64,000 nt of DNA from Haliotis cracherodii (lineage: Eukaryota): contig NW_027266283.1 of NCBI RefSeq assembly GCF_022045235.1, positions 4,030,001 to 4,094,000 of the forward strand, written 5' to 3'. This document shows positions 200 to 64,000 of the stretch, piece after piece. The position numbers and the translations under genes are program-made. Below the pieces are notes generated by a model. It saw nothing but the letters and a program-made list of their open reading frames with translations. It did no database searches and was not told the origin of the DNA. The number at the start of each line of letters is the position of its first letter. Position 1 is the first letter of the stretch.

Positions 200-298
200 A
201 TTGTGGAGGACGCATCTGTCAGTGGAGAGGACGTCTTCAGCCTAGCACCTGTAGTTGTAGCTGCCCGAAACTTACTTCTGGAAAAAGTTGCGGAAAAC
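200..298 (+). CDS. Exon: single EGF-like module
   Basis: tttcag|A..C|gtaag, 99 bp; DCGGRICQWRGRLQPSTCSCSCPKLTSGKSCGK. Confidence 0.85.
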
Positions 299-3200
299 GT
301 AAGATCTGTCTTGTATACACATGGAAATTAGTTACGCAACACCCGTGTATTCTGAGACTGAGCAACTTTAACGAACTAGTGCATGAAAAAGATTTCCATA
401 CCAAATAAATTATTTAGTGAAAAGAAAGGTTTGGGGAGGAACAAAGCCAAGATTACCATGAAATAATATAATGTGTTTTTTTGGAGATGTTACAGATTTG
501 GAAAATGTTTTAATTTCATCCAAAAAAGTTACGAATGTCACTTTGGTTGCACAGTCTTAACTGTCAGTACCATGCACACTTCTTGTTTACGGAATTGACG
601 AACAATGTCCTGCAAGTCCAAATTTTGACTTCCATCAGTATCTTGTGTAACCTCCCTGAACCCGAACAACTGCTTCAAGACACCACCTCATTCTTTGGGT
701 AAATCTCTGGATTTGATTCTGAGGAATTCTGCCCCATTCTGTTCCCATTTTAGACTGTTGTGTTCGACAAAGAGACCCACCTGTCCATACCCTCAGTGAA
801 GTGACTGCTGCTTTGCATGAGATGGGACAGAATTCCTCAACCCAATCCATATCCATGTATAGTATGCATCAAGATCGTCTAATCTAGCCATTCACAATCG
901 CCGAAGAGATGGCATCACAATAGATCGACAACACTGAGATATGTCACAAATATTAAGTTATCTTGGTGCCGTTGTACAAAGCGAACTTGGCCCTAAGGTG
1001 ATCAAAACTCCCATATCTTAGCATTGACTTACGCAATCGTTGGGCTTAGTTTGTTTTGTACAACGGCGCCCTGATCAATAGGCGGACTTCAGGGTAGTCT
1101 GTTGGCCAAAGCCTCGGGTATTCTTGAATTTTATCTGATATAATGTATTACTTTCTTTTCGTTTGTTGTTTAACACCGCACTCGGCGCAATATTCCAGCT
1201 ACATGACAGCGGTCTGTAAATTATCGAATCTGGACCACACAATCCATTGATTGGTATTATGAGCATCGATCCATGCAATTGTTTCGATGACATGCATCAA
1301 CCAAGTCGGCGAGCTTAACCACACCGACAAGCATAGTCGCCATCAACGACATCAACGACAACAACGCCACCTTGCCTGTTACATTAAACGTCGGTTGCTG
1401 AAGACCTCTTGTGACCCGGATCTTCACGGGTGCATTACATTTGTATTAACTGTGGAAATCCACCTCCGTCGTCTAGTCGATGGCCGTCTGTCCGTACTGC
1501 GGAAGCTCTGGGTTCGATCCTTTGTCGTATCCCACAAACCACGTTACAAGATGTTACTTGTTGTAGCCCTGCCTGGCACTCTGTATCAATGGGACAAAAT
1601 AAGAACTGGTCGGATCGGTGTCTTTTCTGTGACCGAGTCGGTTATCCATGTTAAAACCATCTATGAAACTCGTATTTTTTCCGCATTTACAAAAGTCACC
1701 CCTGCATGCACCTCGCTATTGGTGAAATAATCATGAACACAACTTTCAAACCCTTCTTCACAATGTCATACTTTCTCCAACAGTTAATTGCCCAGTGGAA
1801 GAGCCTGCACATTGTTCGAAGCCCAATTGCCGTTTTTTCCCGCTGTCTTGTCCGATATCCTGTGGCGTGTGTCCGAAATCTCCAGGTAGGTTACAACACA
1901 AACAGTATCTATCAACTCAAGTTCTGCCCCTTCGACATGCCAGAAGCGTGTGATCATGGGTTCGAATCTCGGTTCGTCCTGATTCTTTTTTATTTTATAG
2001 GCTGTCGGCACCATACCCGTGCTCGAGGGTTAATACAAAACGTCTAAGGGCTTGCATCACTTCGAACTTTCTTTCAACATCATCCTGAATAGTTAAACAA
2101 CTGAAGAGAAGTGATTTTCAGTGAAACTGTGCACATTTTGAAATGTGGTTCAAGTTAAAGCATAAATACTTATTCTTAACGAACATTTCTGGCTGTTTTC
2201 CTTTTGTACAAAATTCGGTATCGAGTTATCCCAATTGGACATGTTGCAGCTACGTCTACGGAGAAACCAACGACGACGCCAACGACGACGCCAACGACGA
2301 CGCCAACGACGACGCCAACGACGACGCCAACGACGACGCCAACGACGACGCCTACGACGACGCCTACGACCACGCCTACGACCACGCCTACGACCACGCC
2401 CGCTTGCACCCTCAAATGCCCAAACAATAGTGTGCTGGATCTAAAGGAATGCGAGTGTAATTGTAATCCAGGCTGGTACGGAAATCAGTGTGGTAAGTAT
2501 GGTTCTGGCTATGTGGACCGCCTCCGCGGTCTAGTGGTAGAGCGTAGGTCCGGGGTTCGATACCCGGCCGCGACAAAACGTTAAAAGATGGTACTTGCTG
2601 TTACCCTGTCTGGCGCTCGGCATGAAGGGGCTAAAACAAGGAATGGTCGGTATTCTGTGTCCGAGTGGTGTATTCATGTTAAATTGCGGCATGGTATCTT
2701 AGTGTGCTAGCACTATAAATCGGCATCAGTCCGGACTAGTACAAGCAGCCACACACCCCCACATACGCACGCACGCACACACCCCACACCCCACACCCAC
2801 ACAAGTGCAATAATCTTGGACGCGACGTTAAACCCAATAGACCTTACTCTGGCTATGTGGAATCTACAATCAGATTATTGACTTAATAGATGTCGTTGTC
2901 AGACCGGACGATTTGTGGTCGTAAGTGCCTGAAGTTTAAATATGGATTGAAATTGATGAAATTGTTGAAGTTAGTGATTCAGGGTCCACATTGGATAACC
3001 ACGTGCACACCTTACTATCGTAAGAGGCGACTAACGGCTTTCTAACTTGGTTCATTCATGTCATCGTATCCCAATTGCGTGGAACGATGCTCATGATATC
3101 AATCACTGGACACGATTACTTACAGACCGCCGTCACACAGCTCGAATATTGCGGCGTTAAACATACAATCAAAGCCATACTGACGTTTCGTATTTCATTC

Positions 3201-6200
3201 AGATTGCAACCTCAAGTGTGCAAACGGAGGCATCCTGGACAAGCTAAGGTGTGAGTGTAAATGTGTTGAGGGCTACCGGGGATCGGACTGCAGCAAACCT
3301 CCGTGTAACCCCAAGGACTGCGTCAATGGGAGCCTGGACAAGACAACGTGCGCCTGCAAGTGCCTACCAAACTGGCATGGCCCTAAGTGCGGTATGTGGT
3401 ATAACTTTAATCCAACCTTAACCAAACAGTCTGGTATGTTTCGACGGTCGTAGATGGTATTTGGAAGACAATGAACAGGGGGAAGAGGGCGAGGTTCAAG
3501 TGGGTCGTGAGGTCGGGAGACTGGTTTGGGAGACTGGATTTGTGAGACTGGAGTGTGGATACGCCGTCAACAATTAACCCTGTGCATACTTAATTTCAGA
3601 CTGTGATCTTGCTTGTAAGAATGGAGGTACCTTGGACGGGGCAAGATGTCAGTGTATGTGCAGCGGTGGCCACAGAGGTCAGGATTGCAGCAAGCCTCCA
3701 TGCAAGACCTCCTGCATCAGTGGGAAGGTCAACCAGGAGACCTGTGCTTGCGAGTGTGAAAAAGGCTGGAGTGGCCCTTCCTGTGGTAAGATATAGGCAA
3801 ATAGATGGGGTGGCCTTGTACTGAATCTGTTGGCCCGTCACTTCGAAGACCCGTTTTGCTTTCACCCACATTTCCCACGATATGTGGAGCCCATTTGTGA
3901 CACCTGGTTTTAACTGTTGTCAATTACAGAATACGATTCGATGACCTAGATTCCTTGAACCCATTTGGCTAAAACTGACATATTTTTTAACAACCACATA
4001 CTTTCATCGAAAATGAATGCCTAATCCAAATCGAGAGACCATTCGCCCCATCCATGGGCACGGAGAAACATCTGATGGGTTCGAATCCCTGTGCGCCCTG
4101 ATTGTTTTATATGCATTATATCCGTGAACGGCTTTCCCTAAGAGCTACTACATTTGGGACTTTCCTCTCATCGAACTGGGGGCGATCGGGTAGCCTAGTG
4201 ATTAAAGCGTTCGCTCGTCATGCCGAAGACCTGGGTTCGATTCCCTACAAGGGTACAATGTGTGAAGCCCATTTGTGGTGTCCCCCCGCCATGATATTGC
4301 TGGAATATTGCTGGAATATTGCTAAAAGCTGCGTGAGGCCATAATCACTCACTCACATAAGTTAACACGCGATAACTGCTGTTCCAGACTGCAGCCTAAA
4401 ATGCGCCAACGGTGGCACGGTGGACGGGGCGCAGTGTGACTGCACCTGTGTCGGGGGCTTCAGGGGGCTGGATTGCAGTAAGCCACCTTGCCAGACCAAG
4501 TGTATCAATGGCAAGGTCAACCAGGACAACTGTGCTTGCGTGTGCACAGAAGGCTGGAGTGGTTCTTCTTGCGGTGAGTTTGCCAGTTGTATTGCCAGTT
4601 GTATTGCCAGTTGTATTGCCAGTTGTGTTCATTGGGAACTGGCATCACGCTAGGCACAAATATTTTGAATGCTATAGTATTGGCTGTAGAACGAAACGAT
4701 TTAGTCATTTTAGTAAACTTTAGAATGTTTGAATGTACAAAATCCTTTTGCCAGGTTAATATGTCTATGTGAATGCATTCGACACCTAAGAGATGTTACA
4801 ATACTGCAAACGAATCTTGGCTTTTCATGTTTGCTTCCCAATGCTGAAGTCATCCCAATTACTGTAGCGTTACCGCAGGAGAGAAAATGAACATCTCTCC
4901 CGTGAAGATCGGTTAGAATTGATCTTCAGTAACCCATTCTTGTCCCAAGAGGCACTGACAGGAAATATGCGGTCGGGTAGCCTTGTGGTGAAAGTGTTCG
5001 CTCGTCACACCGCAGATCCGGGTTCGACTCCCCTCAAGGGTACAATGTCTGAAGCTTATTTCTGGTGTCCCCCGCCGTGATATTGCTGTAATATTGCTAA
5101 AAGCGGCGTAAAACCACACTCACTCATGGTATCCAACTTGCGCCAGTCGATACTTGTGATGTAAACCATTGAATTGTCTTGTTCCGCATTCCGCCATCAT
5201 ATAGCAGGAAGGCAGTGTTAAACATCCGTGCGGCTTCTGGGTCAGAATAGTTTCTCGAATAGGCACGGTAGTAAGGCAGCATTCTGCTGATTGTGTCACT
5301 GCATCCATCATCACAATGACGTGTTCAAGCACTGATAGAATGGAGGGTAAGATTTCTTTGAGCAGATTACTAATGTTGATGGACCCGACTTTTCAGAATG
5401 CAGTCTCCAATGCAAGAATGGAGGCAAACTGGATGGAGATGCATGTCAATGCTCATGCGTGGACGGTTACAAAGGTTCCGATTGCAGCAAGCCTCCGTGC
5501 AAGACGGCATGTGTCAACGGGAAGGTCAACCAGGAGACCTGTGCCTGCGAGTGTACTGCTGGGTGGAGTGGTCCCAAGTGTGGTACGTACCAATAGCTAG
5601 AGCGGTTATGTGACAGATCTTTCGAAACGTATACTAGAAACCCCATTCTCGGGTTATTGAAGATAAAACAATCATTTACAGTAGACTGCGGTTATAACGA
5701 ACTCAAAGGGACCACTATTTTTAGTTCGTAATAACCTTAGTTCGTTATAAGCATATATACAGCATGTATACAACAAATGGCCGGGACTTTAACATAAGTA
5801 CGTAATATCGGTCAGTACCTTATAAGCGTGTTCGTTATAAACGTAGTTTACTGTATACATGTGACATATAATGAACGTGTGGATGTAATACAACGTGAGT
5901 TGTTGCGATAGCATTAATCCTGTTTAACGCCGCACACAGCAATATTCCAGCTTGATAGCGGTGGTCTGAAAATAATAGTCTGGACGAGACAATGTAGTGA
6001 TTGACATGAGCATCGATCCACGCAATTGGGATACGATGATATTCATCAACCAAGTCAGCGACCCTGACCATCCGATCCCGTTAGTCTCCTCTTACAATCA
6101 TTGTTTGCTTAAGACATATTCTACCCGGAATCTTCACGGGTGGGAGAGTCTAAAGCGCATTAGGTAATCCTCTACTTGACTCTTGAACACTTTTGGCAGA

Positions 6201-60200: not shown

Positions 60201-63200
60201 AGGGGGCCCAGTCTAAGGTGCAGCGATTCGCTATGCAGAGTTGCGTCCCTTAGGTACGCCAGAAACCCATGATTGTGGGTTCGAATCCCTGTTCGCCCCG
60301 ATTGTTTCTAGGTTTGTCGGCCCCATACCCGTGCTCGTGGTTTTCATCGAAGTGGTAAACGTCTGAGACCTGCATGACTTCGGGCTTTCTTCCCACATTA
60401 AGCTGACACGCCGCGATATAACTGGAATACTGTTAAAAGCGGCGTTAAACCAAACTCACTCATTGCTTGTCATGCGGAGATACTTCCCCTTGGCTCAACC
60501 AGGAGCCCTACACCTGCGATTTCCACCAAATAGGTAAATGTCTGAATCGGCTTCACGTTACCTAAGGCGCTGCCATATAAACATTTCACAAAGTGATGGC
60601 AGCGTTGTGGGCGGTAGCAAGTCATGCAACCACTACAATACTGCTACGACCGACCCTGAAAATCCCAGTTAGAATAGGTCTTCAGAAACCCATGCTTCCC
60701 GTAAGAGGCGACTATGCTTGTAAGAGGCGACTTACGGGATCGGGCTCGCTGACTTGTATGATGCACGTCATCGTATTCCAAGTACGTAGATCATGAACAT
60801 CGGATTGTCTGGTGCAGACTCGATTATTTACAGACTGCCGTCATATGCATGCAGCTGGAATACTGTTGGGTGCAGCGTGAAACAAACAAACCACTATGGC
60901 CACTCTGTGAAACATCGCCGAGTTGTAACCAGGAAAGGATTTTTTCTTTAGGCGCCAATACTTGTCACCGTATCCCAACGGCGCGGATCGTTGCTAAAAA
61001 AAACCAAACACTGGATTGTCTGGTCCATACTCACTTTGTAGGCATCCGTCATGTAGCTTGAAAATGAAACATGAATACAATACTAAGTAAACCCATAACT
61101 TTATGTGTTGTTATTAGGGGTGACTATTGGTCTGGAAATCACTATTGCAATAACTATTGATAGATATTGCAAGCAACTATCGCGATAAATATCGATAGTT
61201 TTCAGTGTATCATTTTAGATGGATTTTAGAGTTAAATTAAACCTTGGAACTGAAGTGAATGTGATAACCATAGCAACAAATGAGTAAAGTTTGAGATATG
61301 ACTGTTTTTTCTTTACCCTAATAATTTAAGAAAAAGACACCTCCACATTATCATGTGTGAATTACTCTTACTCATGATCAAAAGAAAAACAAATTCGAAA
61401 AGCATTGCATGTATTTTATTGATATGGTAAATACAATTGAAACTTCCGATATTCCTAACTGAAATCGATACTACTGATCAGAAACTGATTTAACATTCGA
61501 TTTATTGACTTTAAGTGCTTACCAATAGCAATAGATCGATATTTCAATTTATCGTGACGCCCCTATCTGTTATCACTTGCAGCAAGTGGGTGTGGCAAGA
61601 AGCCGGATGTGGCCAATGCCAACTACACCCAGTACGGTGACGGGTCCGTGATGACTGTCCTCATCTTCGCTTGTCTCCCCGGCTTCACTAAGGCCGGGTC
61701 AGGCATCAGTCAGTGCCAGGAGGACGGCACCTGGTCGGAATTCGAGTTCACCTGTACAGGTAAGTGTAGTCATACCTCTACCAGAAGTGGGAATGGATGT
61801 CGCGCCAGAAACCTATGATTGTGGTTTCGAATCCCGGTTCGCCCCGATTGTTTCTAGGTTTGTCAGCACCAGACCCGTGCTCGTGGGTTTCACCGAAGTG
61901 GTAAACGTCTGAGACCTGCATCACTTCGGGCTTTCCTCCCACATTAAGCTGACACACCGTGATATAACTCCACTCACTGTGTGCAGGGTGACGACATATG
62001 TAATAGTAGCATAAGGGTCGTAGTTCCAGTTTTGCAATAGCATAAAACGCCATTGCCGCAGAATGTATAATATCATGTTTTCGTAACGCATCCTGTTCTA
62101 CTTTTAGCTCGTAATAAATCCCTTTGGTTTTTATGTGAAACGCCATTGATTTTGAAAACTGAATTTATTCGTTCTTTTCGTATTCGTAAAACCCTTCTCG
62201 CCTACAACGTCGGAAAATCTTTACTTTGTTATGCAGCAGCCAAGCCCAAGAGGAGTATTGGTGGATGTGGGCCCCCTCCTGACCTGAATGGAATGACTGT
62301 CTCCTACTACAACACCACCACGGAAGGGGCAACTGCGATGTACCAGTGCTTAAAGGGATACACCGGATCTGGGTTTGGTCTGTCAGAGTGCACGCGTTAC
62401 CAGCAGTGGACACGGCCCACACTCACATGCTCAGGTCAGGTCACTATAAAAAAATTTAACCCAGATCAGAATCATTAGTGCGTGATTATGGGCGAGTGAA
62501 TTAACGAACATAATTTGTTCCAGATTAAAAAGTAATCTGAGGGTTCAAACAATACTGTATGCCTGCTCCTTTTAGGGCAATGTTTTATGTCTTAGAAAAT
62601 ATTTTGTCCTTCACTTTCTTTTCAACAATTCTAAGGGTAGCTAAGAGCTGAGCCACTTGCACAAAACGATCATAGTGCTAAGACTATTGTAAGCCTATGT
62701 TAAAGTATGTGAGTTAAGATCGCTTTGTGCAAATTGGCCCTGTTGGCCACTGCCTGAAACAATTAACTCCACCCACAACTGATTTTCAGACTAATTCAAA
62801 CACGTTTCGAAGACAATCAGCAGTCAATATTTTGAGCCATAAATAGCAAATGGCGAATGTGACGCGATAATACTTTTGTGAAGGAATCTATACAAACAAT
62901 GGGTTTAAAGTCAACATTTCACTTCGAACAACTAAGTAATAATTTAAATTATTCGTTGTAGAAATGCATAGCTGTATGTCACATTCGTTTTTTGTACTTG
63001 CAGCACGATCGAGCTCTTGGATACAGATGGGGGAAGCGTTGCAATCACACAATCCCCAGTTCTACTCAATCGTGCATAATCTCTTCTGGGAGTCGTGTTC
63101 CCCAACCATGTCGGTGTCGGTGACCATGGGACCAGACAAGTTGTTGTTCTATCTCCACAACGTCGGATGGGACGGGTCTGACATCTGGGGACAGTCTGTT

Positions 63201-64000
63201 CTAAGGCTGACCAAACAAGACTGGGATACGTTCTCGTTAAGACCAAAGCGTGAGTTCAACACGTTCCTGACCAACTCGGACTGGAACATCCTTGTCGTTG
63301 GCGATGACGGAGTTTATGAAAGGAAGACCCGGCGGTCGAACCTCGGTTGGTCGTACAAGAATGATTCCTGCCTGGTGCATGTGGGCTCTGATTCGGATGC
63401 TGTTCTGGCAGGACTTCTCGATGGAAGTAGTCTTCACCAAAGGGACGTAACTCACTTTGAGGGCCAACTATTTGCCACTCAACAAAGTAAAAGTGTGTCC
63501 GATTTTAATAATCGAGAAACAGGTTGGCATACCAACAAAGAGTTATCAAACGGTGTTAAAAAAATAATCCGTTGGCACCCGAACAAAGCAATGGTGACTG
63601 CAAGCAATGATGACGAGAGACCTCAATGGTGCCTGGACACGTGTTGGCACGAAGTATCCTTAACCAAGAATACGGCTCAACTGATCAAAGGAATCGAAGC
63701 TGGACACAATATTCTCATAAAATCTGGCAATATATTGGCTGCTGCCCGAGACATCGTAGTGTACGAAGGTCAGGTGACTGCAACCCTCAGGGAGCATTGG
63801 TCCCCGTCTGACCAATCATCATTCTCAGAACATTCGGAACAAGTGTGGCAGTCCGTTTCGTCCCAAGGGGAGGTAACCTCATGCAAACACAAACCGGAAT
63901 CGTCAACAGTTACATCCTACACGAGAGAGTATCTCCCAAGTAGGTGGTTCCTCGACAGTCGGTCATGGAGAATGATTCTATCCATTGATTCTAAAGGAAC
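200..64000 (+). CDS. Giant multi-exon extracellular protein, 5'- and 3'-incomplete: EGF-like, (PTTT)11, ~108 further EGF-like modules, 2 four-Cys modules, ShKT, linker, 2 sushi/CCP, unknown C-terminal region
   Basis: 63 exons with AG acceptors and GT (or GC) donors, all introns phase 1, splice into one stop-free frame of ~11,990 nt. No start codon, signal peptide or stop codon inside the window. Single-gene status is inferred from frame and phase compatibility. Confidence 0.85.
635..840 (-). mobile_element. Tc1/mariner transposase C-terminal remnant, internally rearranged
   Basis: Minus strand WGRIPQNQIQRFTQRMR..LEAVVRVQGGYTRY* matches Tc1 C-termini. Plus strand 750-840 reads LDCCVRQRDPPVHTLSEVTAALHE, the segment that normally precedes it. 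Confidence 0.7.
965..1070. mobile_element. MITE
   Basis: Terminal inverted repeats GGTGCCGTTGTACAAA / TTTGTACAACGGCGCC; a similar element lies at ~62651-62740. Confidence 0.6.
1160..1430 (-). mobile_element. SINE family C (non-tRNA head), degenerate, antisense
   Basis: Reverse complement of ACCCGTGAAGATCCGGG...GCTGGAATATTGC..AGTGCGG.GTTAAACAACAAAC. Confidence 0.75.
2250..2492 (+). CDS. Exon: mucin-like (PTTT)11 linker plus single EGF-like module
   Basis: ttgcag|C..G|gtaag, 243 bp; TSTEK(PTTT)11PACTLKCPNNSVLDLKECECNCNPGWYGNQC. Confidence 0.9.
2516..2840 (+). mobile_element. SINE family B (tRNA-like head, MetaSINE/MESC-like core, (CA)n spacer)
   Basis: GACCGCCTCC.CGGTCTAGTGG..GGTTCGATACC..AAAAGATGGTACTTG..CTGGCGCTCGGCAT..CGACGTTAAACCC; about a dozen copies or fragments in window. 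Confidence 0.8.
3203..3391 (+). CDS. Double EGF-like cassette exon 1 (189 bp)
   Basis: DCNLKCANGGILDKLRCECKC...WHGPKC; AG/GT, phase 1-1. Confidence 0.92.
3600..3785 (+). CDS. Double EGF-like cassette exon 2
   Basis: 186 bp; DCDLACKNGGTLDGARCQCMC...; AG/GT. Confidence 0.92.
4178..4356 (+). mobile_element. SINE family A (short, tRNA-Asp-like head)
   Basis: A box TAGCCTAGTG, B box GGTTCGATTCC, tail GATATTGCTGGAATATTGCTAAAAGC..ACTCACTCAC. Confidence 0.8.
4388..4573 (+). CDS. Double EGF-like cassette exon 3
   Basis: 186 bp; DCSLKCANGGTVDGAQCDCTC...; AG/GT. Confidence 0.92.
4580..4628. repeat. 12-bp tandem repeat (TTGCCAGTTGTA) x4
   Basis: Visible just after the exon 3 donor. Confidence 0.85.
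4968..5125 (+). mobile_element. SINE family A
   Basis: Same head and tail as the 4178 copy. Confidence 0.75.
5397..5582 (+). CDS. Double EGF-like cassette exon 4
   Basis: 186 bp; ECSLQCKNGGKLDGDACQCSC...; AG/GT. Confidence 0.92.
5679..5853. mobile_element. pogo/Tc1-mariner-type MITE
   Basis: TA|CAGTAGACTGCGGTTATAACGAAC...GTTCGTTATAAACGTAGTTTACTG|TA; a related copy is inverted at 30451-30617. Confidence 0.8.
5921..6140 (-). mobile_element. SINE family C, antisense
   Basis: Reverse complement of family C, ending ...TCTTCACGGGT. Confidence 0.78.
6200..6385 (+). CDS. Double EGF-like cassette exon 5
   Basis: 186 bp; DCSLKCANGGSLQKDTCRCTC... Confidence 0.92.
6893..7210 (+). mobile_element. SINE family B
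   Basis: Family B core and CACCTCAC tail. Confidence 0.78.
7264..7449 (+). CDS. Double EGF-like cassette exon 6
   Basis: 186 bp; DCNLECQNGGTLDQAKCRCAC...; near-identical to exon 15. Confidence 0.92.
8107..8292 (+). CDS. Double EGF-like cassette exon 7
   Basis: 186 bp; DCKLKCLNGGSLQTLTCECKC... Confidence 0.92.
8357..8718 (+). mobile_element. SINE family B, full length
   Basis: Head, core, (CA)n and (CACCT)n tail. Confidence 0.82.
9430..9685 (+). mobile_element. SINE family C
   Basis: TAGGTCTTCAGCAACCCATGCTTGTC...AGAGGCGAC...CAACCAACCAATC; ends immediately before the exon 8 acceptor. Confidence 0.75.
9700..9885 (+). CDS. Double EGF-like cassette exon 8 (GC donor)
   Basis: 186 bp; DCSLKCANGGALDKEKC...; followed by GCAAGT at the homologous donor position. 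Confidence 0.88.
10401..10440 (+). pseudogene. Decayed cassette-exon remnant
   Basis: ttcag|ATTCAATAC GCT AAT GGA GGT ACC TTA GAC CAG GAG AAA = ANGGTLDQEK; Cys codons and 3' part lost. Confidence 0.6.
10531..10716 (+). CDS. Double EGF-like cassette exon 9
   Basis: 186 bp; DCQLTCKNNGTLDSDKC... Confidence 0.92.
10761..10918 (+). mobile_element. SINE family A
   Basis: A box, B box and family A tail. Confidence 0.8.
11080..11265 (+). CDS. Double EGF-like cassette exon 10 (CGR type)
   Basis: 186 bp; DCGRKCGNNGTLNADKC... Confidence 0.92.
11643..11802 (+). mobile_element. SINE family A (a degenerate copy precedes it at ~11495-11630)
   Basis: A box, B box and family A tail. Confidence 0.78.
11849..12034 (+). 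CDS. Double EGF-like cassette exon 11
   Basis: 186 bp; DCSLTCANGGTLDKINCRCAC... Confidence 0.92.
12058..12283 (+). mobile_element. SINE family C
   Basis: GACCCGTGAAG...AAACAACAAAC. Confidence 0.78.
12330..12515 (+). CDS. Double EGF-like cassette exon 12
   Basis: 186 bp; DCDLQCENGGSLNKETC... Confidence 0.92.
12637..12902 (+). mobile_element. SINE family D (widely spaced A and B boxes)
   Basis: GGGGCACGGGTGGCCCAGTCG...GGTTCGAATC...; flanking TSD TGCG(A/T)TCGGATATG. Confidence 0.82.
13052..13179. mobile_element. Tc1/mariner-type MITE
   Basis: TA|TACTACTCAAAA...TTTTGAGTAGTA|TA; second copy at 46555-46681. Confidence 0.78.
13379..13564 (+). CDS. Double EGF-like cassette exon 13
   Basis: 186 bp; DCQLTCKNNGTLDSAKC... 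Confidence 0.92.
15265..15594 (+). mobile_element. SINE family B
   Basis: Near-identical to the 8357 copy, including the variant B box GGTCTCATCCC. Confidence 0.82.
16274..16459 (+). CDS. Double EGF-like cassette exon 14
   Basis: 186 bp; DCSLKCQNEGTLDNAAC... Confidence 0.92.
16567..16752 (+). CDS. Double EGF-like cassette exon 15
   Basis: 186 bp; ACNLKCQNGGTLDQAKC... Confidence 0.92.
16930..17090 (+). mobile_element. SINE family A
   Basis: Family A head and tail. Confidence 0.75.
17165..17350 (+). CDS. Double EGF-like cassette exon 16
   Basis: 186 bp; DCSLKCANVGSLDKDSC... Confidence 0.92.
17508..17693 (+). CDS. Double EGF-like cassette exon 17
   Basis: 186 bp; DCSLVCQNGGTLNTENC... Confidence 0.92.
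17960..18092. repeat. ~23-bp minisatellite (GTGATATTTTCAGTAAAACGAGG-like) x5-6
   Basis: Directly visible. Confidence 0.8.
18856..19041 (+). CDS. Double EGF-like cassette exon 18
   Basis: 186 bp; DCNLKCLNGGTLDKDNC... Confidence 0.92.
19609..19794 (+). CDS. Double EGF-like cassette exon 19 (CGR type)
   Basis: 186 bp; DCGRQCGNNGTLNADKC... Confidence 0.92.
20036..20221 (+). CDS. Double EGF-like cassette exon 20
   Basis: 186 bp; AAG acceptor; DCKLSCANGGALDKEKC... Confidence 0.9.
22243..22428 (+). CDS. Double EGF-like cassette exon 21
   Basis: 186 bp; DCELKCANNGTLNKDTC... Confidence 0.92.
22559..22611 (+). pseudogene. Truncated pseudo-exon with in-frame stop
   Basis: tttcag|AC TGC CAA CTT GCT TGC AAA AAC GGT GGG ACC TAA GAC AAG TTG AAG TGC = DCQLACKNGGT*DKLKC; TAA at 22591-22593. 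Confidence 0.85.
22741..22852 (+). mobile_element. SINE family A, 3'-truncated
   Basis: Intact A and B boxes; absent from the paralogous intron near 28785. Confidence 0.8.
22901..23086 (+). CDS. Double EGF-like cassette exon 22
   Basis: 186 bp; DCSLKCANGGTLDKDKCECTCDDEY... Confidence 0.92.
24192..24423. mobile_element. MITE
   Basis: Inverted termini GGC.AAAAAATAAGTCTTGGTTCTCAGGCAC / GTGCCTGAGAACCAAGACTATT..TTTTTCGCC. Confidence 0.7.
24599..24784 (+). CDS. Double EGF-like cassette exon 23
   Basis: 186 bp; DCSLKCANGGSLDKEKC... Confidence 0.92.
25008..25258 (+). mobile_element. SINE family C
   Basis: Family C body and tail. Confidence 0.75.
25374..25559 (+). CDS. Double EGF-like cassette exon 24
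   Basis: 186 bp; DCNLSCKNGGTLNEKTC... Confidence 0.92.
25669..25985. repeat. 19-bp G-rich minisatellite (GCAGAGTGGTGGTGGGGTA) x~16
   Basis: Directly visible; runs into a degenerate family A SINE ending near 26115. Confidence 0.92.
26536..26721 (+). CDS. Double EGF-like cassette exon 25
   Basis: 186 bp; DCSLKCENAGTLDKEKC... Confidence 0.92.
26821..27060 (+). mobile_element. SINE family D
   Basis: TSD TCATTTCATTGGA (26808-26820 / 27058-27070). Confidence 0.82.
27965..28149 (-). mobile_element. SINE family C, antisense, abutting a family A fragment
   Basis: Reverse complement of family C, ending GGATCTTCACGGG. Confidence 0.78.
28441..28713 (+). mobile_element. SINE family D
   Basis: TSD TCAGTTAGGATA (28429-28440 / 28712-28723); empty paralogous site at 22668-22679. 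Confidence 0.85.
28867..29052 (+). CDS. Double EGF-like cassette exon 26
   Basis: 186 bp; DCSLKCANGGTLDKDKCECTCADGY...; paralogue of exon 22. Confidence 0.92.
29506..29691 (+). CDS. Double EGF-like cassette exon 27
   Basis: 186 bp; DCSLTCSNGGTLDKDKC...; ends A|gtaag. Confidence 0.9.
30073..30258 (+). CDS. Double EGF-like cassette exon 28 (CGR type)
   Basis: 186 bp; CGRQCGNNGTLNADKC... Confidence 0.92.
30451..30617. mobile_element. pogo/Tc1-mariner-type MITE
   Basis: TA|CAGTAAACTA...TAGTTTACTG|TA; homologous to 5679-5853. Confidence 0.75.
30820..31150. repeat. 23-bp minisatellite with 46-bp dimer structure
   Basis: GGCGTTATGCAGAGTACACAACA alternating with GGCGTTATACAGAGTATGTGACT; bracketed by a ~160-bp direct repeat (30582-30741, 31152-31311). 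Confidence 0.85.
31459..31644 (+). CDS. Double EGF-like cassette exon 29
   Basis: 186 bp; AAG acceptor; DCKLSCANGGKLDSTKC... Confidence 0.9.
32005..32315 (+). mobile_element. SINE family B
   Basis: Family B head, core and tail. Confidence 0.75.
32430..32615 (+). CDS. Double EGF-like cassette exon 30
   Basis: 186 bp; DCDLKCANNGTLNKDTC... Confidence 0.92.
32840..33025 (+). CDS. Double EGF-like cassette exon 31
   Basis: 186 bp; DCKLICKNNGSLDSAKC... Confidence 0.92.
33306..33491 (+). CDS. Double EGF-like cassette exon 32
   Basis: 186 bp; DCSLKCGNGGTLDKEKC... Confidence 0.92.
34525..34710 (+). CDS. Double EGF-like cassette exon 33
   Basis: 186 bp; DCSLKCANGGTLDKDKC...GPGC... Confidence 0.92.
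35262..35447 (+). CDS. Double EGF-like cassette exon 34
   Basis: 186 bp; DCSRKCGNGGTLDNAKC...YRGDDC... Confidence 0.92.
36408..36593 (+). CDS. Double EGF-like cassette exon 35
   Basis: 186 bp; DCSLKCGNGGTLDKDKC... Confidence 0.92.
36953..37138 (+). CDS. Double EGF-like cassette exon 36
   Basis: 186 bp; DCSLKCQNGGTLDKDKC... Confidence 0.92.
38307..38492 (+). CDS. Double EGF-like cassette exon 37 (CGR type)
   Basis: 186 bp; DCGRQCGNNGTLNADKC... Confidence 0.92.
38704..39030 (+). mobile_element. SINE family B with an internal duplication
   Basis: Family B head and tail; CTAGCAC..GGCA.CAGTCCG segment present twice. Confidence 0.75.
39059..39452 (+). mobile_element. SINE family D containing a 16-bp tandem expansion
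   Basis: TSD TCTGTATTATCA; (CCTGGTTCGCCCCAAT) x~8 at 39157-39292. Confidence 0.85.
39495..39680 (+). CDS. Double EGF-like cassette exon 38
   Basis: 186 bp; DCNQTCANGGSLDKEKC... Confidence 0.92.
39960..40145 (+). CDS. Double EGF-like cassette exon 39
   Basis: 186 bp; same peptide as exon 30. Confidence 0.92.
40373..40558 (+). CDS. Double EGF-like cassette exon 40
   Basis: 186 bp; same peptide as exon 31. Confidence 0.92.
40911..41096 (+). CDS. Double EGF-like cassette exon 41
   Basis: 186 bp; DCSLKCDNGGSLDKAKC... Confidence 0.92.
41211..41396 (+). CDS. Double EGF-like cassette exon 42 (GC donor)
   Basis: 186 bp; DCSLKCANGGTLDSSTC...; followed by GCAAGT. Confidence 0.88.
41647..41876 (+). 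mobile_element. SINE family C
   Basis: Family C head to tail. Confidence 0.78.
42011..42196 (+). CDS. Double EGF-like cassette exon 43
   Basis: 186 bp; DCSLQCENGGTLDKAKC... Confidence 0.92.
42925..43110 (+). CDS. Double EGF-like cassette exon 44
   Basis: 186 bp; DCQLKCSNGGTLDKAKC...GYVGSKC. Confidence 0.92.
43332..43517 (+). CDS. Double EGF-like cassette exon 45
   Basis: 186 bp; DCNLKCTNGGKLDPSTC... Confidence 0.92.
43788..44064 (+). mobile_element. SINE family D
   Basis: TSD CT(G/A)AGGAAAATG; empty site at 42601-42614. Confidence 0.85.
44362..44547 (+). CDS. Double EGF-like cassette exon 46
   Basis: 186 bp; copy of exon 44. Confidence 0.9.
44769..44954 (+). CDS. Double EGF-like cassette exon 47
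   Basis: 186 bp; copy of exon 45. Confidence 0.9.
45314..45590 (+). mobile_element. SINE family D (duplicated with its flanks)
   Basis: Same insertion site and TSD as the 43788 copy. Confidence 0.85.
45879..46064 (+). CDS. Double EGF-like cassette exon 48
   Basis: 186 bp; copy of exon 44. Confidence 0.9.
46286..46471 (+). CDS. Double EGF-like cassette exon 49
   Basis: 186 bp; exon 45-like with a distinct end (CNFGWKGPKC). Confidence 0.9.
46555..46681. mobile_element. Tc1/mariner-type MITE
   Basis: TA|TACTACTCAAAA...TTTTGAGTAGTA|TA. Confidence 0.78.
46728..46963 (+). mobile_element. SINE family C
   Basis: Family C head to tail. Confidence 0.75.
47234..47419 (+). CDS. Double EGF-like cassette exon 50
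   Basis: 186 bp; DCKRQCRNGGVLNPETC... Confidence 0.92.
47605..47845 (+). mobile_element. SINE family C
   Basis: GACCCGTGAAGATCCGG...GCTGGAATATTGCTGAGTGC. Confidence 0.8.
48176..48262. repeat. 18-bp G-rich repeat (GGCGGGGATCGGTGGAGG) x4
   Basis: Directly visible. Confidence 0.85.
48760..49085 (+). mobile_element. SINE family B, full length
   Basis: Intact A box TGGTCTAGTGG and B box GGTTCGATCCC. Confidence 0.85.
49257..49442 (+). CDS. Double EGF-like cassette exon 51 (Arg-rich, contains RGDS)
   Basis: 186 bp; ECGLKCNNGGTLLTRYCRCMCANGYRGDSC... Confidence 0.92.
49886..50113 (+). mobile_element. SINE family C
   Basis: Family C head to (AAAC)n tail. Confidence 0.8.
50579..50764 (+). CDS. Double EGF-like cassette exon 52
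   Basis: 186 bp; DCNLNCRNGGVLDPNKC... Confidence 0.92.
52296..52481 (+). CDS. Double EGF-like cassette exon 53
   Basis: 186 bp; DCNLTCDNGGILDGNRC... Confidence 0.92.
52546..53082 (+). mobile_element. Two tandem family C SINEs (52546-52771 and 52819-53082)
   Basis: Second copy is full length: ACCCGTGAAGATCCGGGGTAG...GCGGCGTTAAACAACAAACC. Confidence 0.82.
53878..54033 (+). mobile_element. SINE family A
   Basis: Family A body and tail. Confidence 0.75.
54476..55463 (+). mobile_element. SINE family B interrupted by a ~690-bp C/A-rich expansion
   Basis: Head and core 54476-54712; tail CGCTATATAAGTG...CACCTC 55408-55463. Confidence 0.75.
54713..55406. repeat. Compound minisatellite: CCCCACACACCCACAT-type units, then (CACACCCTAACC/CACAACCTAACC) x~17
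   Basis: Directly visible; source of the spurious PHT/VWG ORFs. Confidence 0.92.
55603..55692 (+). CDS. Exon: single EGF-like module
   Basis: 90 bp; DCKQLCNNNGTLDVANCKCDCTGAFYGKSC; tag|A..T|gtaag. Confidence 0.88.
55768..56192 (+). mobile_element. SINE family C with a nested family A SINE (55834-55997)
   Basis: 14-bp TSD ATGCTTGTAACAGG at 55823-55836 and 55998-56011. Confidence 0.85.
56536..56598 (+). CDS. Exon: 4-Cys mini-module
   Basis: 63 bp; KCRRKCESPQVISPASCSCQ; strong polypyrimidine acceptor, AAG|gtatg. Confidence 0.8.
57187..57264 (+). CDS. Exon: 4-Cys mini-module
   Basis: 78 bp; DLPPCTKTCSGPTVLYKRTCSCVPNT; ttccag|..G|gtatg. Confidence 0.8.
57415..57700 (+). mobile_element. SINE family B, 5'-degenerate
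   Basis: Family B core and tail. Confidence 0.75.
58095..58343 (+). mobile_element. SINE family C with a 22-bp internal expansion
   Basis: (AAAAGGCGCCTATGCTTGTCGT)-like x5 at 58125-58247. Confidence 0.78.
58509..58616 (+). CDS. Exon: ShKT-like domain
   Basis: 108 bp; NCAQFDGAKCKKVVDGNFCGTPASNADCPQGCGLC; six Cys with the C-P-x-x-C-G-L-C ShKT ending. Confidence 0.82.
58927..59195 (+). mobile_element. SINE family D
   Basis: Family D body; shares its 5' flank with the 60191 copy. Confidence 0.8.
59436..59800. repeat. 20-bp C-rich minisatellite (TCCCCACCCCCACGTCCTCG)n
   Basis: Directly visible. Confidence 0.9.
60056..60130 (+). CDS. Exon: Pro/acidic linker
   Basis: 75 bp, phase 1-1; ENDFTPPPKDDKPKAHIDDEEENPF; ttcag|..G|gtaagt. 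Confidence 0.72.
60191..60460 (+). mobile_element. SINE family D
   Basis: TSD TCATTGCTTG (60181-60190 / 60460-60469). Confidence 0.82.
60651..60892 (+). mobile_element. SINE family C
   Basis: Family C head to tail. Confidence 0.72.
61115..61565. mobile_element. hAT-like MITE
   Basis: Termini TAGGGGTG / CGCCCCTA, ATCGAT-rich subtermini, 8-bp flanks gttgttat / tctgttat. Confidence 0.6.
61583..61759 (+). CDS. Exon: sushi/CCP domain 1
   Basis: 177 bp; CGKKPDVANA...FACLPGF...SQCQEDGTWSEFEFTC; four Cys plus conserved G-x-W. Confidence 0.9.
61801..61977 (+). mobile_element. SINE family D, 5'-truncated
   Basis: CGCCAGAAACCTATGATTGTGG...ACTCACT. Confidence 0.78.
62237..62434 (+). CDS. Exon: sushi/CCP domain 2
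   Basis: 198 bp (CAGCAG acceptor, alternative start 62240); AKPKRSIGGCGPPPDLNG...YQCLKGY...ECTRYQQWTRPTLTC. Confidence 0.9.
63004..64000 (+). CDS. Large exon encoding an unrecognised C-terminal region, open to the window edge
   Basis: ttttgtacttgcag acceptor, phase 1; ~332 stop-free codons RSSSWIQMGEALQ...WFLDSRSWRMILSIDSKG; absent from the ORF track because it has no stop. Confidence 0.85.

What the first reader, a model, noticed from the sequence alone, without database searches (positions are those of the whole stretch)
200..64000. Giant secreted-type protein with ~109 EGF-like modules, ShKT, sushi and an unknown domain
Seen: 63 phase-compatible exons give at least ~4,000 aa, with about 19% Cys across the array. 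Known: Notch has 36 EGF repeats, fibrillin 47 and mussel foot protein-2 about 11; I know of no characterised protein with this architecture. Inference: a very long disulfide-stiffened extracellular rod with effector domains at its ends, possibly a mucus, adhesive or fibre component, an egg-coat or gamete-recognition protein, or an immune tether. Function cannot be read from sequence alone.
Basis: partly seen in the sequence, partly recalled or inferred. Interest (0 to 1): 0.85.

Follow-up and report, generated by a model that had tools for sequence, protein, structure and literature searches.

The report
Giant abalone CAP–EGF rod protein
The window holds one real, expressed black-abalone gene for a secreted protein of about 4,100 to 4,700 residues, built from 109 disulfide-locked EGF modules with binding-type domains at both ends; it is probably a long structural rod or tether, and the public annotation cuts it into small mis-named fragments.

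Summary
On the + strand, 64 exons (window 200 to 64334) have AG acceptors and GT or GC donors. They join into one open frame of 4,140 aa with 109 EGF modules and 19.4% Cys across the array. Third codon positions vary 2.5 times more than first and second, so the peptide is under selection.

RNA contigs from four Haliotis species show GT..AG joints for the 3' part. They also revealed two exons my own first pass had missed.

- The genome is Haliotis cracherodii. RefSeq splits the locus into fragments named "wnt inhibitory factor 1-like" and "protein shifted-like".
- Upstream of the window lie a signal-peptide exon and two CAP–hinge–EGF–ShKT units of the known molluscan "CAP-ShK type II" kind. They are in phase with the array, giving a conceptual 4,723 aa. 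This join is inferred.
- The "unknown domain" is four ~110-aa repeats of a mollusc family without a Pfam model. A confident model has no clear solved relative.

The most likely function is a secreted structural rod or tether, by analogy with octovafibrin and Dumpy. The tissue is unknown. I class it as a new variant of known kinds. The scan had already noted this C-terminal region on this window; another note describes a PAN-EGF-Sushi protein elsewhere in the genome, possibly a paralogue.

The parts
200..298 (+). Single EGF-like exon of CAP unit B, phase 1-1, 99 nt. It is not the first exon of the gene.
   Evidence: Splice sites read. Paralogous to the EGF exon of upstream unit A. HMM match E 0.01.
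1784..1885 (+). ShKT-like exon 1 (six Cys, ...CPISCGVC), phase 1-1.
   Evidence: Pfam PF01549, E 0.03, 15.3 bits, below the 20.9 cut-off. 65% identical to the ShKT exon of unit A.
2250..2492 (+). Mucin-like (TTTP)x11 linker followed by one EGF module, in one exon.
   Evidence: Tandem repeat 2267-2400. Translation, splice sites, EGF HMM E 9.5e-6.
3203..3391 (+). Variant double-EGF exon, 189 nt.
   Evidence: HMM E 2.8e-24. Pfam EGF_TEN and EGF_Teneurin. Splice sites.
3600..52481 (+). Array of 52 canonical 186-nt double-EGF exons (104 modules). Introns in the whole 64-exon model run 107-3121 nt. Exon starts are listed in the full report.
   Evidence: 18 invariant columns including all 12 Cys. RefSeq fragments P0001 and P0003 join consecutive exons exactly as read here.
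55603..55692 (+). Single EGF-like exon, 90 nt, phase 1-1. Predicted only.
   Evidence: HMM E 2.5e-6. Splice sites.
56536..56598 (+). Four-Cys half-EGF exon (C-x3-C-x10-C-x-C), 63 nt, phase 1-1. Predicted only.
   Evidence: Sequence and splice sites. Same Cys pattern as exon 57187-57264. No Pfam match.
57187..57264 (+). Four-Cys half-EGF exon, 78 nt. RNA shows it joined to ShKT2.
   Evidence: In RNA contig X2 the last 30 letters before the ShKT2 exon equal window 57234-57263 exactly, next to a GT donor.
58509..58616 (+). ShKT-like exon 2 (six Cys, spacing 7/8/8/3/2, ...CPQGCGLC).
   Evidence: Joint 58616>60056 in RNA contigs X1, X2 and X6. No Pfam match. Weak alignment to a ShKT-like module of P0014.
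60056..60130 (+). Acidic linker exon of 75 nt (ENDFTPPPKDDKPKAHIDDEEENPF). Found only through the RNA contigs.
   Evidence: GT..AG joints 58616>60056 (X1, X2, X6) and 60130>61583 (all four runs). Translation.
61583..61759 (+). Sushi/CCP domain 1.
   Evidence: Pfam PF00084, E 8.4e-9. Joints on both sides in RNA contigs.
62237..62434 (+). Sushi/CCP domain 2.
   Evidence: Pfam PF00084, E 5.3e-8. Joints 61759>62237 and 62434>63004.
63004..64000 (+). Terminal exon for the 442-aa C-terminal domain of four ~110-aa repeats. It continues to the stop at window-equivalent 64332-64334 (L004:332-334).
   Evidence: 97%-identical transcript-derived protein P0152. Repeats shown by hhalign, 93-99% probability for five of six pairs, 65% for r2-r3. 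Model pLDDT 81.

Best explanation
This is a single gene of Haliotis cracherodii for a giant secreted glycoprotein.

Shown:
- 64 in-phase exons in and just past the window encode, in order: EGF, a ShKT-like module, a (TTTP)11 mucin-like linker, 108 compact EGF modules without the calcium-binding motif (tenascin/teneurin/WIF-1 type; 106 of them in 53 two-module exons), two 4-Cys half modules, a ShKT-like module, an acidic linker, two Sushi domains, and a 442-aa domain of four repeats, then a stop. There is no transmembrane segment.
- The 3' third is transcribed and spliced in four abalone species.
- The exons are under purifying selection.

Inferred:
- The gene starts 16.5 kb upstream of the window with a signal-peptide exon and two CAP–hinge–EGF–ShKT units of the molluscan CAP-ShK type II kind. 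All are in phase with the array, giving a conceptual 4,723 aa, about 499 kDa, with 721 Cys.
- Mechanism: three disulfides per 31-residue module, with almost no inter-module linker, should make a thin stiff rod. I estimate roughly 0.2-0.3 micrometre from general knowledge of about 2-3 nm per EGF module. O-glycosylated hinges sit near the N-terminus.
- The CAP heads and the Sushi plus four-repeat tail would attach the rod to other matrix components or to further copies. The protein would then work as a load-bearing or spacing fibre or tether in a secreted material (mucus or adhesive, mantle or periostracal matrix, or egg investment). Octovafibrin, fibropellins and Dumpy work this way.
- Which secretion it belongs to is unknown.
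For: - Exon anatomy, phases and a single open frame.
- Purifying selection (codon-position differences 0.20/0.20/0.51) and exons more alike than their introns in recent duplicates.
- No D-x-[DN]-E-C calcium-binding motif anywhere.
- EGF subtype: Pfam EGF_Teneurin and EGF_TEN. The closest solved chain by sequence is WIF-1 EGF, E 3.8e-9.
- RNA: GT..AG joints 58616>60056>61583, 61759>62237 and 62434>63004, in up to four species. One contig carries 1,100 nt upstream of ShKT2, and its last 30 nt equal exon 57187-57264. Contig depth is about 2,600-3,300 in run X2 against 3-30 in the others.
- The transcript-derived protein P0152 ends at the same stop.
- The RefSeq fragments join consecutive array exons as read here.
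- CAP identity of the upstream exons: PDB matches to PR-1 and CRISPs, E 1.4e-4, and 49% identity to the Pfam-verified CAP domain of Babylonia P0014.
- Proteins with CAP plus the same EGF type exist in Babylonia, Lingula and Asterias. The type II family is described in PMC6409789.
- The upstream 15 exons all have AG/GT sites and keep one frame from the ATG to the final stop. No other signal-peptide-like first exon lies between the units, or between the array and the 3' cassette.
- Structural analogues: octovafibrin and Dumpy.
Against: - No read or contig was laid across the array itself, across the 52481>55603 junction, or across any upstream junction. Full-length continuity therefore rests on phases, on the absence of alternative first or last exons, and on contig length.
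- The 1,100 nt in run X2 fit the model only roughly. From this genome's exon 48 I expected about 1,030 nt.
- After unit A's ShKT exon and after the following spacer exon, read-through meets a stop within a few codons. An AATAAA follows the latter. A short CAP-ShK product, or a separate gene A, is therefore possible.
- All internal exons are symmetric, so exon skipping could yield much shorter products.
- The structural role is by analogy only. No tissue, proteomic or binding data were available. The homodimer prediction gave no verdict.
Confidence: 0.55

Rival explanations
1. The locus is several transcription units, as the public annotation implies: one or two ordinary CAP-ShK type II genes upstream, an EGF-array gene, and a separate ShKT–Sushi–four-repeat gene like the PAN–Sushi paralogues.
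For: RefSeq models cut the array into pieces. There is a stop plus AATAAA just after the spacer exon that follows unit A. Paralogues carry the Sushi plus four-repeat cassette behind a different front end, PAN. No RNA was laid across the array or the upstream junctions.
Against: Every internal exon lacks a start and a stop, and all are phase-compatible. RefSeq fragment P0001 starts with an out-of-frame Met, which looks like a prediction artefact. No signal-peptide-like exon was found between the units or between exon 52 and the 3' cassette. The RNA contig reaches 1,100 nt upstream of ShKT2, and its first stretch is exon 57187-57264.
Confidence: 0.15
2. The array is a bank of cassette exons. Because all 53 double-EGF exons are symmetric (phase 1-1), splicing picks subsets, and the real products are shorter rods of variable length or composition rather than one 109-module protein.
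For: All array exons are 186 or 189 nt and phase 1-1. Some acceptors (aag) and donors (GC, GTTAG, GTTCG) are weak. Near-identical exons recur with a period of nine exons.
Against: The only spliced models available join consecutive exons: 13-14-15 and 38-39 in H. cracherodii, and best matches to exons 22 and 23, in that order, in H. rubra. These are gene predictions, not reads. Purifying selection acts on all exons. There is no direct evidence of skipping.
Confidence: 0.2
3. It is a soluble bioactive or defensive CRISP-like effector, or an immune recognition tether. The CAP/ShKT heads (ion-channel or lipid binding) or the Sushi plus four-repeat tail (ligand recognition) carry the function, and the EGF array is only a spacer.
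For: CAP-ShK proteins are venom or salivary components in some gastropods, and CRISPs block ion channels. Sushi domains are common in recognition proteins. The four-repeat family has expanded in tandem in this genome.
Against: An effector has no evident need for a 3,300-residue conserved rod. ShKT-like modules of this kind are poorly conserved. Oyster type II genes are mantle-specific rather than venom-related. There are no dibasic processing sites at module junctions; the junction reads ...KCG|DC....
Confidence: 0.1
4. It is a decaying or non-functional exon-satellite expansion: an assembly or duplication artefact without a protein product.
For: Recent tandem duplications lie at 42.6-46.4 kb, with three copies of a 1.4-1.5 kb two-exon unit at 94-95% identity. 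Such repeats are prone to assembly error.
Against: There are no stops or frameshifts in 53 exons. Substitutions are biased to third positions. The locus is expressed in four species. The exon order is conserved in H. rubra.
Confidence: 0.02

Closest known systems
Molluscan CAP-ShK type II proteins (Gerdol et al. 2019, PMC6409789; includes Conus Tex31 and Mr30)
   Same: Signal peptide, a low-complexity spacer before the CAP domain, then CAP, then a C-terminal Cys-rich region that mixes EGF-like modules with poorly recognisable ShKT-like modules. The upstream units A and B have exactly this order.
   Different: Described members are 295-452 aa with a few Cys modules. Here there are two CAP units in tandem, 109 EGF modules, and an added Sushi plus four-repeat tail. 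The CAP-to-array join is inferred, not shown.
Octovafibrin (Octopus bimaculoides egg-tether protein, PMC10336842)
   Same: A molluscan secreted protein: an uninterrupted run of non-calcium-binding EGF modules flanked by binding domains at both ends, working as a load-bearing fibre.
   Different: It has 29 EGF modules with a different Cys spacing, C-type lectins at both ends, and 135 kDa. No sequence relationship was tested. Abalone lay no tethered eggs.
Drosophila Dumpy
   Same: A giant extracellular protein made mostly of EGF modules (308) that forms tension-bearing filaments (cited).
   Different: Its EGF modules are interleaved with DPY modules. From my own knowledge it has a ZP domain and a membrane anchor. 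It has no CAP, Sushi or four-repeat domain.
Tenascin/teneurin-type and WIF-1 EGF repeats
   Same: Module subtype: about 31 residues, six Cys, no calcium-binding motif, packed head to tail. Pfam EGF_Teneurin and EGF_TEN match, and WIF-1 is the best PDB match.
   Different: The C3-x-C4-x-C5 spacing is tighter than in classical EGF. Those proteins carry 5-14 such repeats. The RefSeq names 'WIF-1-like' and 'shifted-like' reflect only this module similarity; no WIF domain was seen.
Vertebrate CRISPs
   Same: CAP domain, a four-Cys hinge, then a ShKT-fold (ICR) domain. The CAP exons match solved CRISPs.
   Different: An EGF module sits between the hinge and the ShKT-like module, and the molecule continues for more than 4,000 residues.
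Haliotis PAN–Sushi x5–four-repeat proteins (P0159) and stand-alone ~510-aa four-repeat secreted proteins of gastropods and bivalves (P0153-P0158)
   Same: Homologous over the whole 442-aa C-terminal domain, at 35% and about 20% identity. The Sushi plus four-repeat cassette is shared.
   Different: None of them carries an EGF array or CAP. All are uncharacterised.

Membership tests
EGF-like domain (tenascin/teneurin type; Pfam PF23106, PF25024, PF07974) | Six cysteines in about 30-40 residues with a G-[FYW]-x-G motif before C6, and a profile match | tested here: met
   All 12 Cys are invariant in 53 double modules, and G(Y/H)RG and GW(S/T)G are conserved. PF23106 scores 32 bits, above its 24.3 cut-off, for exon 22903-23085. 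Other exons fall below threshold individually. The PDB profile match to WIF-1 EGF has E 3.8e-9.
Calcium-binding EGF (fibrillin/Notch type) | N-terminal D-x-[DN]-E-C consensus | tested here: not met
   Zero occurrences in the 4,140-aa model.
CAP superfamily (PF00188) | CAP domain with the HNxxR, G(E/Q)N(I/L), GHYTQ and C-NY motifs, and a profile match | tested here: inconclusive
   Single exons give no Pfam match. Exon 3 matches PR-1 and CRISP chains in register at E 1.4e-4. Exon 1 matches weakly, E 0.13. Exon 3 is 49% identical to the Pfam-verified CAP domain of P0014. The motifs are visible. The joined domain was not sent to Pfam. These exons lie outside the window.
Molluscan CAP-ShK type II | Signal peptide, low-complexity spacer, CAP, then a mixed EGF-like and degenerate ShKT-like C-terminal region | tested here: met
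   The order of conserved exons is the same in units A and B and fits the description in PMC6409789. No CAP-domain phylogeny was made.
ShKT / ShK domain-like (PF01549) | Six Cys ending C-x3-C-x2-C, and a profile match above 20.9 bits | tested here: inconclusive
   ShKT1 scores 15.3 bits, E 0.03, below the cut-off. ShKT2 has no match at E up to 10. Both have the Cys pattern. ShKT2 aligns weakly to a module of P0014, E 0.05.
Sushi/CCP (PF00084) | Four Cys, a conserved Trp, and a profile match above 20.7 bits | tested here: met
   36.1 and 33.6 bits.
   A scan of all Pfam-A with the C-terminal domain and three paralogues at E up to 1 returns no GON match.
VirK-like fold (PDB 5xta, lpg1832) | Structural superposition of one repeat on the 120-residue VirK chain | tested here: inconclusive
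Membrane-anchored EGF receptors (Notch, MEGF, teneurin) | A transmembrane segment | tested here: not met
   The frame ends ...VVSIDWFVY-stop without a hydrophobic stretch. The signal-peptide candidate is the only N-terminal hydrophobic run. No predictor was run.

The most novel reading that the evidence does not exclude
The gene encodes a previously unrecognised half-megadalton fibre-forming protein of an abalone secretion (pedal adhesive or mucus, periostracum, or egg coat). The mollusc-specific four-repeat C-terminal domain would be a new assembly or ligand-binding module. The nine-exon super-periodicity of near-identical exons (9/18/27/36, 20/29/38, 30/39, 5/14) would place recurring sites along a rod of about 0.25 micrometre. 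The symmetric exons might also allow length-variable isoforms.
Probability: 0.2. Interest if true: 0.75.

Novelty: new variant of a known kind. Interest (0 to 1): 0.5.

Why it matters
If the full-length product exists, it would be among the longest uninterrupted EGF arrays that I know of. It would be a natural test case for how intramolecular disulfide 'staples' set the mechanics of extracellular fibres, a question opened by octovafibrin. It is also a candidate component of abalone adhesion, shell or egg-coat materials in an endangered species. It extends the poorly understood CAP-ShK type II family from small secreted proteins to a giant matrix protein. It points to an uncharacterised four-repeat domain family shared by gastropods and bivalves. 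In practical terms, the RefSeq annotation of this locus is fragmented and mis-named, which will mislead expression and proteomic studies.

Tried and rejected
- Structure of the C-terminal domain with a two-sequence alignment: pLDDT 31, unusable.
- Foldseek against the PDB with the good model: only noise, TM about 0.1.
- ESM Atlas look-alikes for the C-terminal domain and for the bivalve homologue P0156: nothing usable.
- Complex prediction on two copies of the C-terminal domain: no answer. It gives no support and no evidence against, the alignment was not used, and the fold was uncertain in the run. It is not used as evidence.
- Pfam on single CAP exons and on the 4-Cys, acidic and ShKT2 exons: no matches.
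I redid the step with coordinates only.
- I tried to explain the 1,100-nt upstream reach of the X2 contig by where exon 48 becomes identical to exons 44 and 46. The fit is only approximate, about 1,030 against 1,100 nt, so it is not used as proof.
- Search for a second signal-peptide exon between units A and B, between ShKT1 and the array, and between exon 52 and the 3' cassette: none credible. The candidate at 54346 has a stop after 21 codons and a poor donor. The candidate at 1937 lies in a dispersed repeat.
- More CAP or EGF units in the 30 kb upstream of unit A: none. A '4-Cys' hit at L002:4840 also occurs on the other strand, so I take it for a repeat element.
- Polyprotein-precursor idea: rejected, because there are no dibasic sites at module junctions.
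- Literature searches for abalone EGF, ShK, mucus, shell-matrix or 'wnt inhibitory factor' proteins gave nothing on this gene.
- Joined model: no search, family scan or fold was run on the joined spliced model. All searches were exon by exon, by reference. Joining was done only locally, to check frame, length and composition.

Full report
**Where the window comes from.** The window is G000:C20:4030001-4094000, + strand, in a 1.18-Gb genome. Two database proteins are 100% identical to consecutive window exons. They are RefSeq models of Haliotis cracherodii on a contig of 5,819,777 bp, the length of C20. One is XP_071111778.1 'wnt inhibitory factor 1-like' (244 aa, exons at 16274, 16567 and 17165). 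The other is XP_071111781.1 'protein shifted-like' (148 aa, exons at 39960 and 40373). So the public annotation cuts this locus into small pieces. The first of these models begins with an out-of-frame Met.

**Checking the observation.**
- A six-frame scan shows dozens of Cys-rich open segments, all on the + strand.
- A cysteine-pattern search finds 52 segments of exactly 61 codons. Each is preceded by ag|AY and followed by G|gt, so the introns are phase 1 and the exons are 186 nt.
- The 52 exon starts are 3600, 4388, 5397, 6200, 7264, 8107, 9700, 10531, 11080, 11849, 12330, 13379, 16274, 16567, 17165, 17508, 18856, 19609, 20036, 22243, 22901, 24599, 25374, 26536, 28867, 29506, 30073, 31459, 32430, 32840, 33306, 34525, 35262, 36408, 36953, 38307, 39495, 39960, 40373, 40911, 41211, 42011, 42925, 43332, 44362, 44769, 45879, 46286, 47234, 49257, 50579 and 52296. 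Each ends 185 nt later.
- An HMM built from them finds one more double exon (3203-3391) and three single modules (200-298, in 2250-2492, and 55603-55692). It finds nothing on the minus strand.
- In the alignment all 12 Cys, plus N7, G9, G26, P33, G41 and G58, are invariant.
- Pfam assigns the modules to teneurin/tenascin-type EGF. The closest solved chain by sequence is the EGF region of WIF-1, which explains the RefSeq names.
- The calcium-binding EGF motif is absent.

**The gene model inside the window.**
- From the sequence and RNA (below) I read 64 exons. All have AG acceptors; 61 donors are GT and 2 are GC.
- Joined locally, they give one frame of 4,140 aa with a single stop at the end. 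Cys is 16.6% overall and 19.35% across the array.
- The joined model was used only for this bookkeeping. Every search was done exon by exon, by reference.

**Evidence that the exons code for a constrained protein.**
- Among the 52 canonical exons, mean pairwise differences at codon positions 1, 2 and 3 are 0.20, 0.20 and 0.51.
- Median nucleotide identity between exons is 70%. The last four exons are the most divergent.
- There are recent segmental duplications. A 1.4-1.5 kb two-exon unit occurs three times at 42.6-46.4 kb, and 32411-33027 matches 39941-40560. In these, exons are 97-100% alike. Their flanking introns are 90-91% alike in two comparisons and 99.5-100% in two others.
- Near-identical exons also recur at offsets of 9, 18 and 27 exons: 9/18/27/36, 20/29/38, 30/39 and 5/14. 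I cannot explain this higher-order pattern.
- In the whole genome, all 53 matches to the exon profile at E below 1e-8 lie in this locus.

**RNA evidence.** A search with the terminal exon found holders in six coded organisms. I laid contigs of four runs (four organisms) on 58401-64000.
- Contigs skip introns with GT..AG ends at 58616>60056, 60130>61583, 61759>62237 and 62434>63004, so these runs contain RNA.
- The joints confirm the predicted ShKT2, Sushi 1, Sushi 2 and terminal exons. They also reveal a 75-nt acidic linker exon (60056-60130) that I had missed.
- Run X1 has 0-2 differences per piece, so it is presumably the window's species. It shows the first two joints at low depth.
- In run X2 the contigs have depth of about 2,600-3,300, against about 10 and 29 in X6 and X10. 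That suggests strong dependence on tissue or condition.
- The X2 contig carries 1,100 nt upstream of ShKT2. Its last 30 letters equal window 57234-57263, which ends at a GT donor. This defines a further exon, 57187-57264, a 4-Cys half module.
- A similar predicted exon lies at 56536-56598.
- The three small exons sum to 231 nt, so about 870 nt more of upstream exon sequence sit on that contig. This is compatible with exons 49-52 plus part of exon 48, but the fit is only approximate.
- I did not see the 52481>55603 junction, nor any junction inside the array.

**Upstream of the window.**
- Exon 200-298 starts in phase 1, so the gene must begin upstream. I fetched 40 kb.
- Two paralogous units, A and B, share the same series of conserved exons: four CAP exons, a 4-Cys hinge, an EGF exon and a ShKT-like exon. 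Each unit is preceded by a Thr/Pro-rich spacer exon.
- CAP identity: exon 3 matches PR-1 P14a and snake CRISPs in register (E 1.4e-4). It is 49% identical to the Pfam-verified CAP domain of a Babylonia protein.
- Unit B's EGF and ShKT exons are the window's 200-298 and 1784-1885.
- A signal-peptide-like exon (MTRTMSFAVVLGLLVALLPAVTS...) lies at window -16503 to -16422, with a phase-1 donor.
- With coordinates only, the 15 upstream exons all have AG/GT sites. Together with the 64 exons they keep one frame of 4,723 aa, about 499 kDa, with 721 Cys.
- No second signal-peptide exon exists between the units.
- Read-through after unit A's ShKT exon, or after the next spacer exon, hits a stop within a few codons. 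An AATAAA follows the latter. A short product or a separate gene A cannot be excluded.
- The order signal peptide, low-complexity spacer, CAP, EGF-like module, degenerate ShKT is exactly that described for molluscan CAP-ShK type II proteins. That group includes Tex31 and Mr30, and its oyster members are mantle-specific (PMC6409789).
- A profile search of 1.84 billion representative proteins with the double-EGF exon found only 443 hits. None had more than 34 matched stretches. Among the hits are CAP plus EGF proteins of 563-671 aa from Babylonia, Lingula and Asterias; two of the three also carry ShKT-like modules.
- So the kind is known, and its scale here is not.

**The C-terminal 'unknown domain'.**
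- The terminal exon (63004 to the stop at 64332-64334) encodes 442 aa without any Pfam match.
- A word-based search found only a 97%-identical transcript-derived Haliotis protein.
- The genome holds paralogues: five full-length tandem copies and one partial copy on C11 (34-35% identity for the full copies) and more distant ones on C23 and C67.
- The distant ones are stand-alone secreted proteins of about 510 aa. They are also present in the bivalves Mya and Dreissena, and all are uncharacterised.
- A H. rubra protein of this family, matching at 34% like the C11 copies, is PAN plus five Sushi plus this domain.
- The domain consists of four homologous ~110-aa repeats. hhalign gives 93-99% probability for five of the six pairs and 65% for r2-r3.
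- With a 15-sequence alignment AlphaFold2 gives pLDDT 81 and pTM 0.84.
- Foldseek finds nothing.

**How it most likely works.**
- Shown: it is a secreted-type polypeptide with no membrane anchor, an enormous uninterrupted run of compact triple-disulfide modules, a mucin-like linker, and non-EGF domains at the C-terminal end. It is expressed, and strongly so in some samples.
- Inferred: CAP heads at the N-terminus, a stiff extended rod, and attachment through both ends. The role would be a structural fibre, spacer or tether in a secreted matrix.
- The closest working models are octovafibrin, Dumpy and fibropellins. [quoted passage not shown] Dumpy has 308 EGF modules.
- I put about 0.8 on 'one array-to-C-terminus gene', about 0.65 on the CAP units being part of it, and about 0.45 on the structural-rod role. 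Which secretion it belongs to is open.

**Limits.** The single read-laying run covered only 58401-64000. The homodimer prediction gave no verdict.

Noticed in passing
window 58775-59335, 60084-61018, 61767-62140 (also many other introns, e.g. 52486-53180, 56008-56250): A dispersed SINE-like element recurs in the introns and in upstream loci. Its six-frame translations repeatedly read ...GLQQPMLA...RLTGSGGQAR... and ...CGFESRFAPIVSRFV.... In all four RNA runs it draws summed contig depths of 10^5 or more, with hundreds of spurious 'joints'.
   Followed up: partly
window 54712-55407 and 59435-59794: Long CACCC-rich low-complexity tracts lie inside introns. GC skew turns negative over 52-60 kb. 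They create long spurious ORFs on both strands.
   Followed up: no
window 25669-25986, 30818-31132, 39154-39292, 17960-18091, 48175-48263, 58125-58248: Intronic minisatellites with 16-46 bp units and 5-17 copies.
   Followed up: no
double-EGF exons 5/14, 9/18/27/36, 20/29/38, 30/39 (e.g. 11080, 19609, 30073, 38307): Exons 94-99.5% identical recur at offsets of 9, 18 and 27 exons, while their neighbours are about 70% alike. Long intron homology was found only for 32411-33027 against 39941-40560. This could be an old nine-exon super-repeat with patchy conversion, or selection for a periodic variant module.
   Followed up: partly
G000:C11:5511108-5845020 (L007-L012); C23:16938339-17037274 (L013, L014); C67:1789125-1799171 (L015): On C11 there is a cluster of five full-length copies and one partial copy of the four-repeat domain; these probably belong to PAN–Sushi–four-repeat genes. 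Further clusters of stand-alone four-repeat genes lie on C23 and C67. Together they form an uncharacterised, lineage-expanded mollusc family.
   Followed up: partly
L002:399-1407 (window -19601 to -18593): An open frame of about 250 aa, followed by an overlapping frame of about 120 aa, reads like a DDE/Tc1-mariner-type transposase. It lies upstream of the proposed first exon. It was not scanned against Pfam.
   Followed up: no
window 62234-62240: The Sushi 2 acceptor is a tandem cagcag (NAGNAG). Either site keeps the frame. The RNA joints are reported with a 3-nt ambiguity, so usage cannot be told.
   Followed up: no
L003:3385-3610 (window -6615 to -6390): After unit A's ShKT exon, and again after the next spacer exon, read-through meets a stop within 2-5 codons. 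An AATAAA lies about 25 nt after the second stop. This is a possible short CAP-ShK isoform ending.
   Followed up: partly
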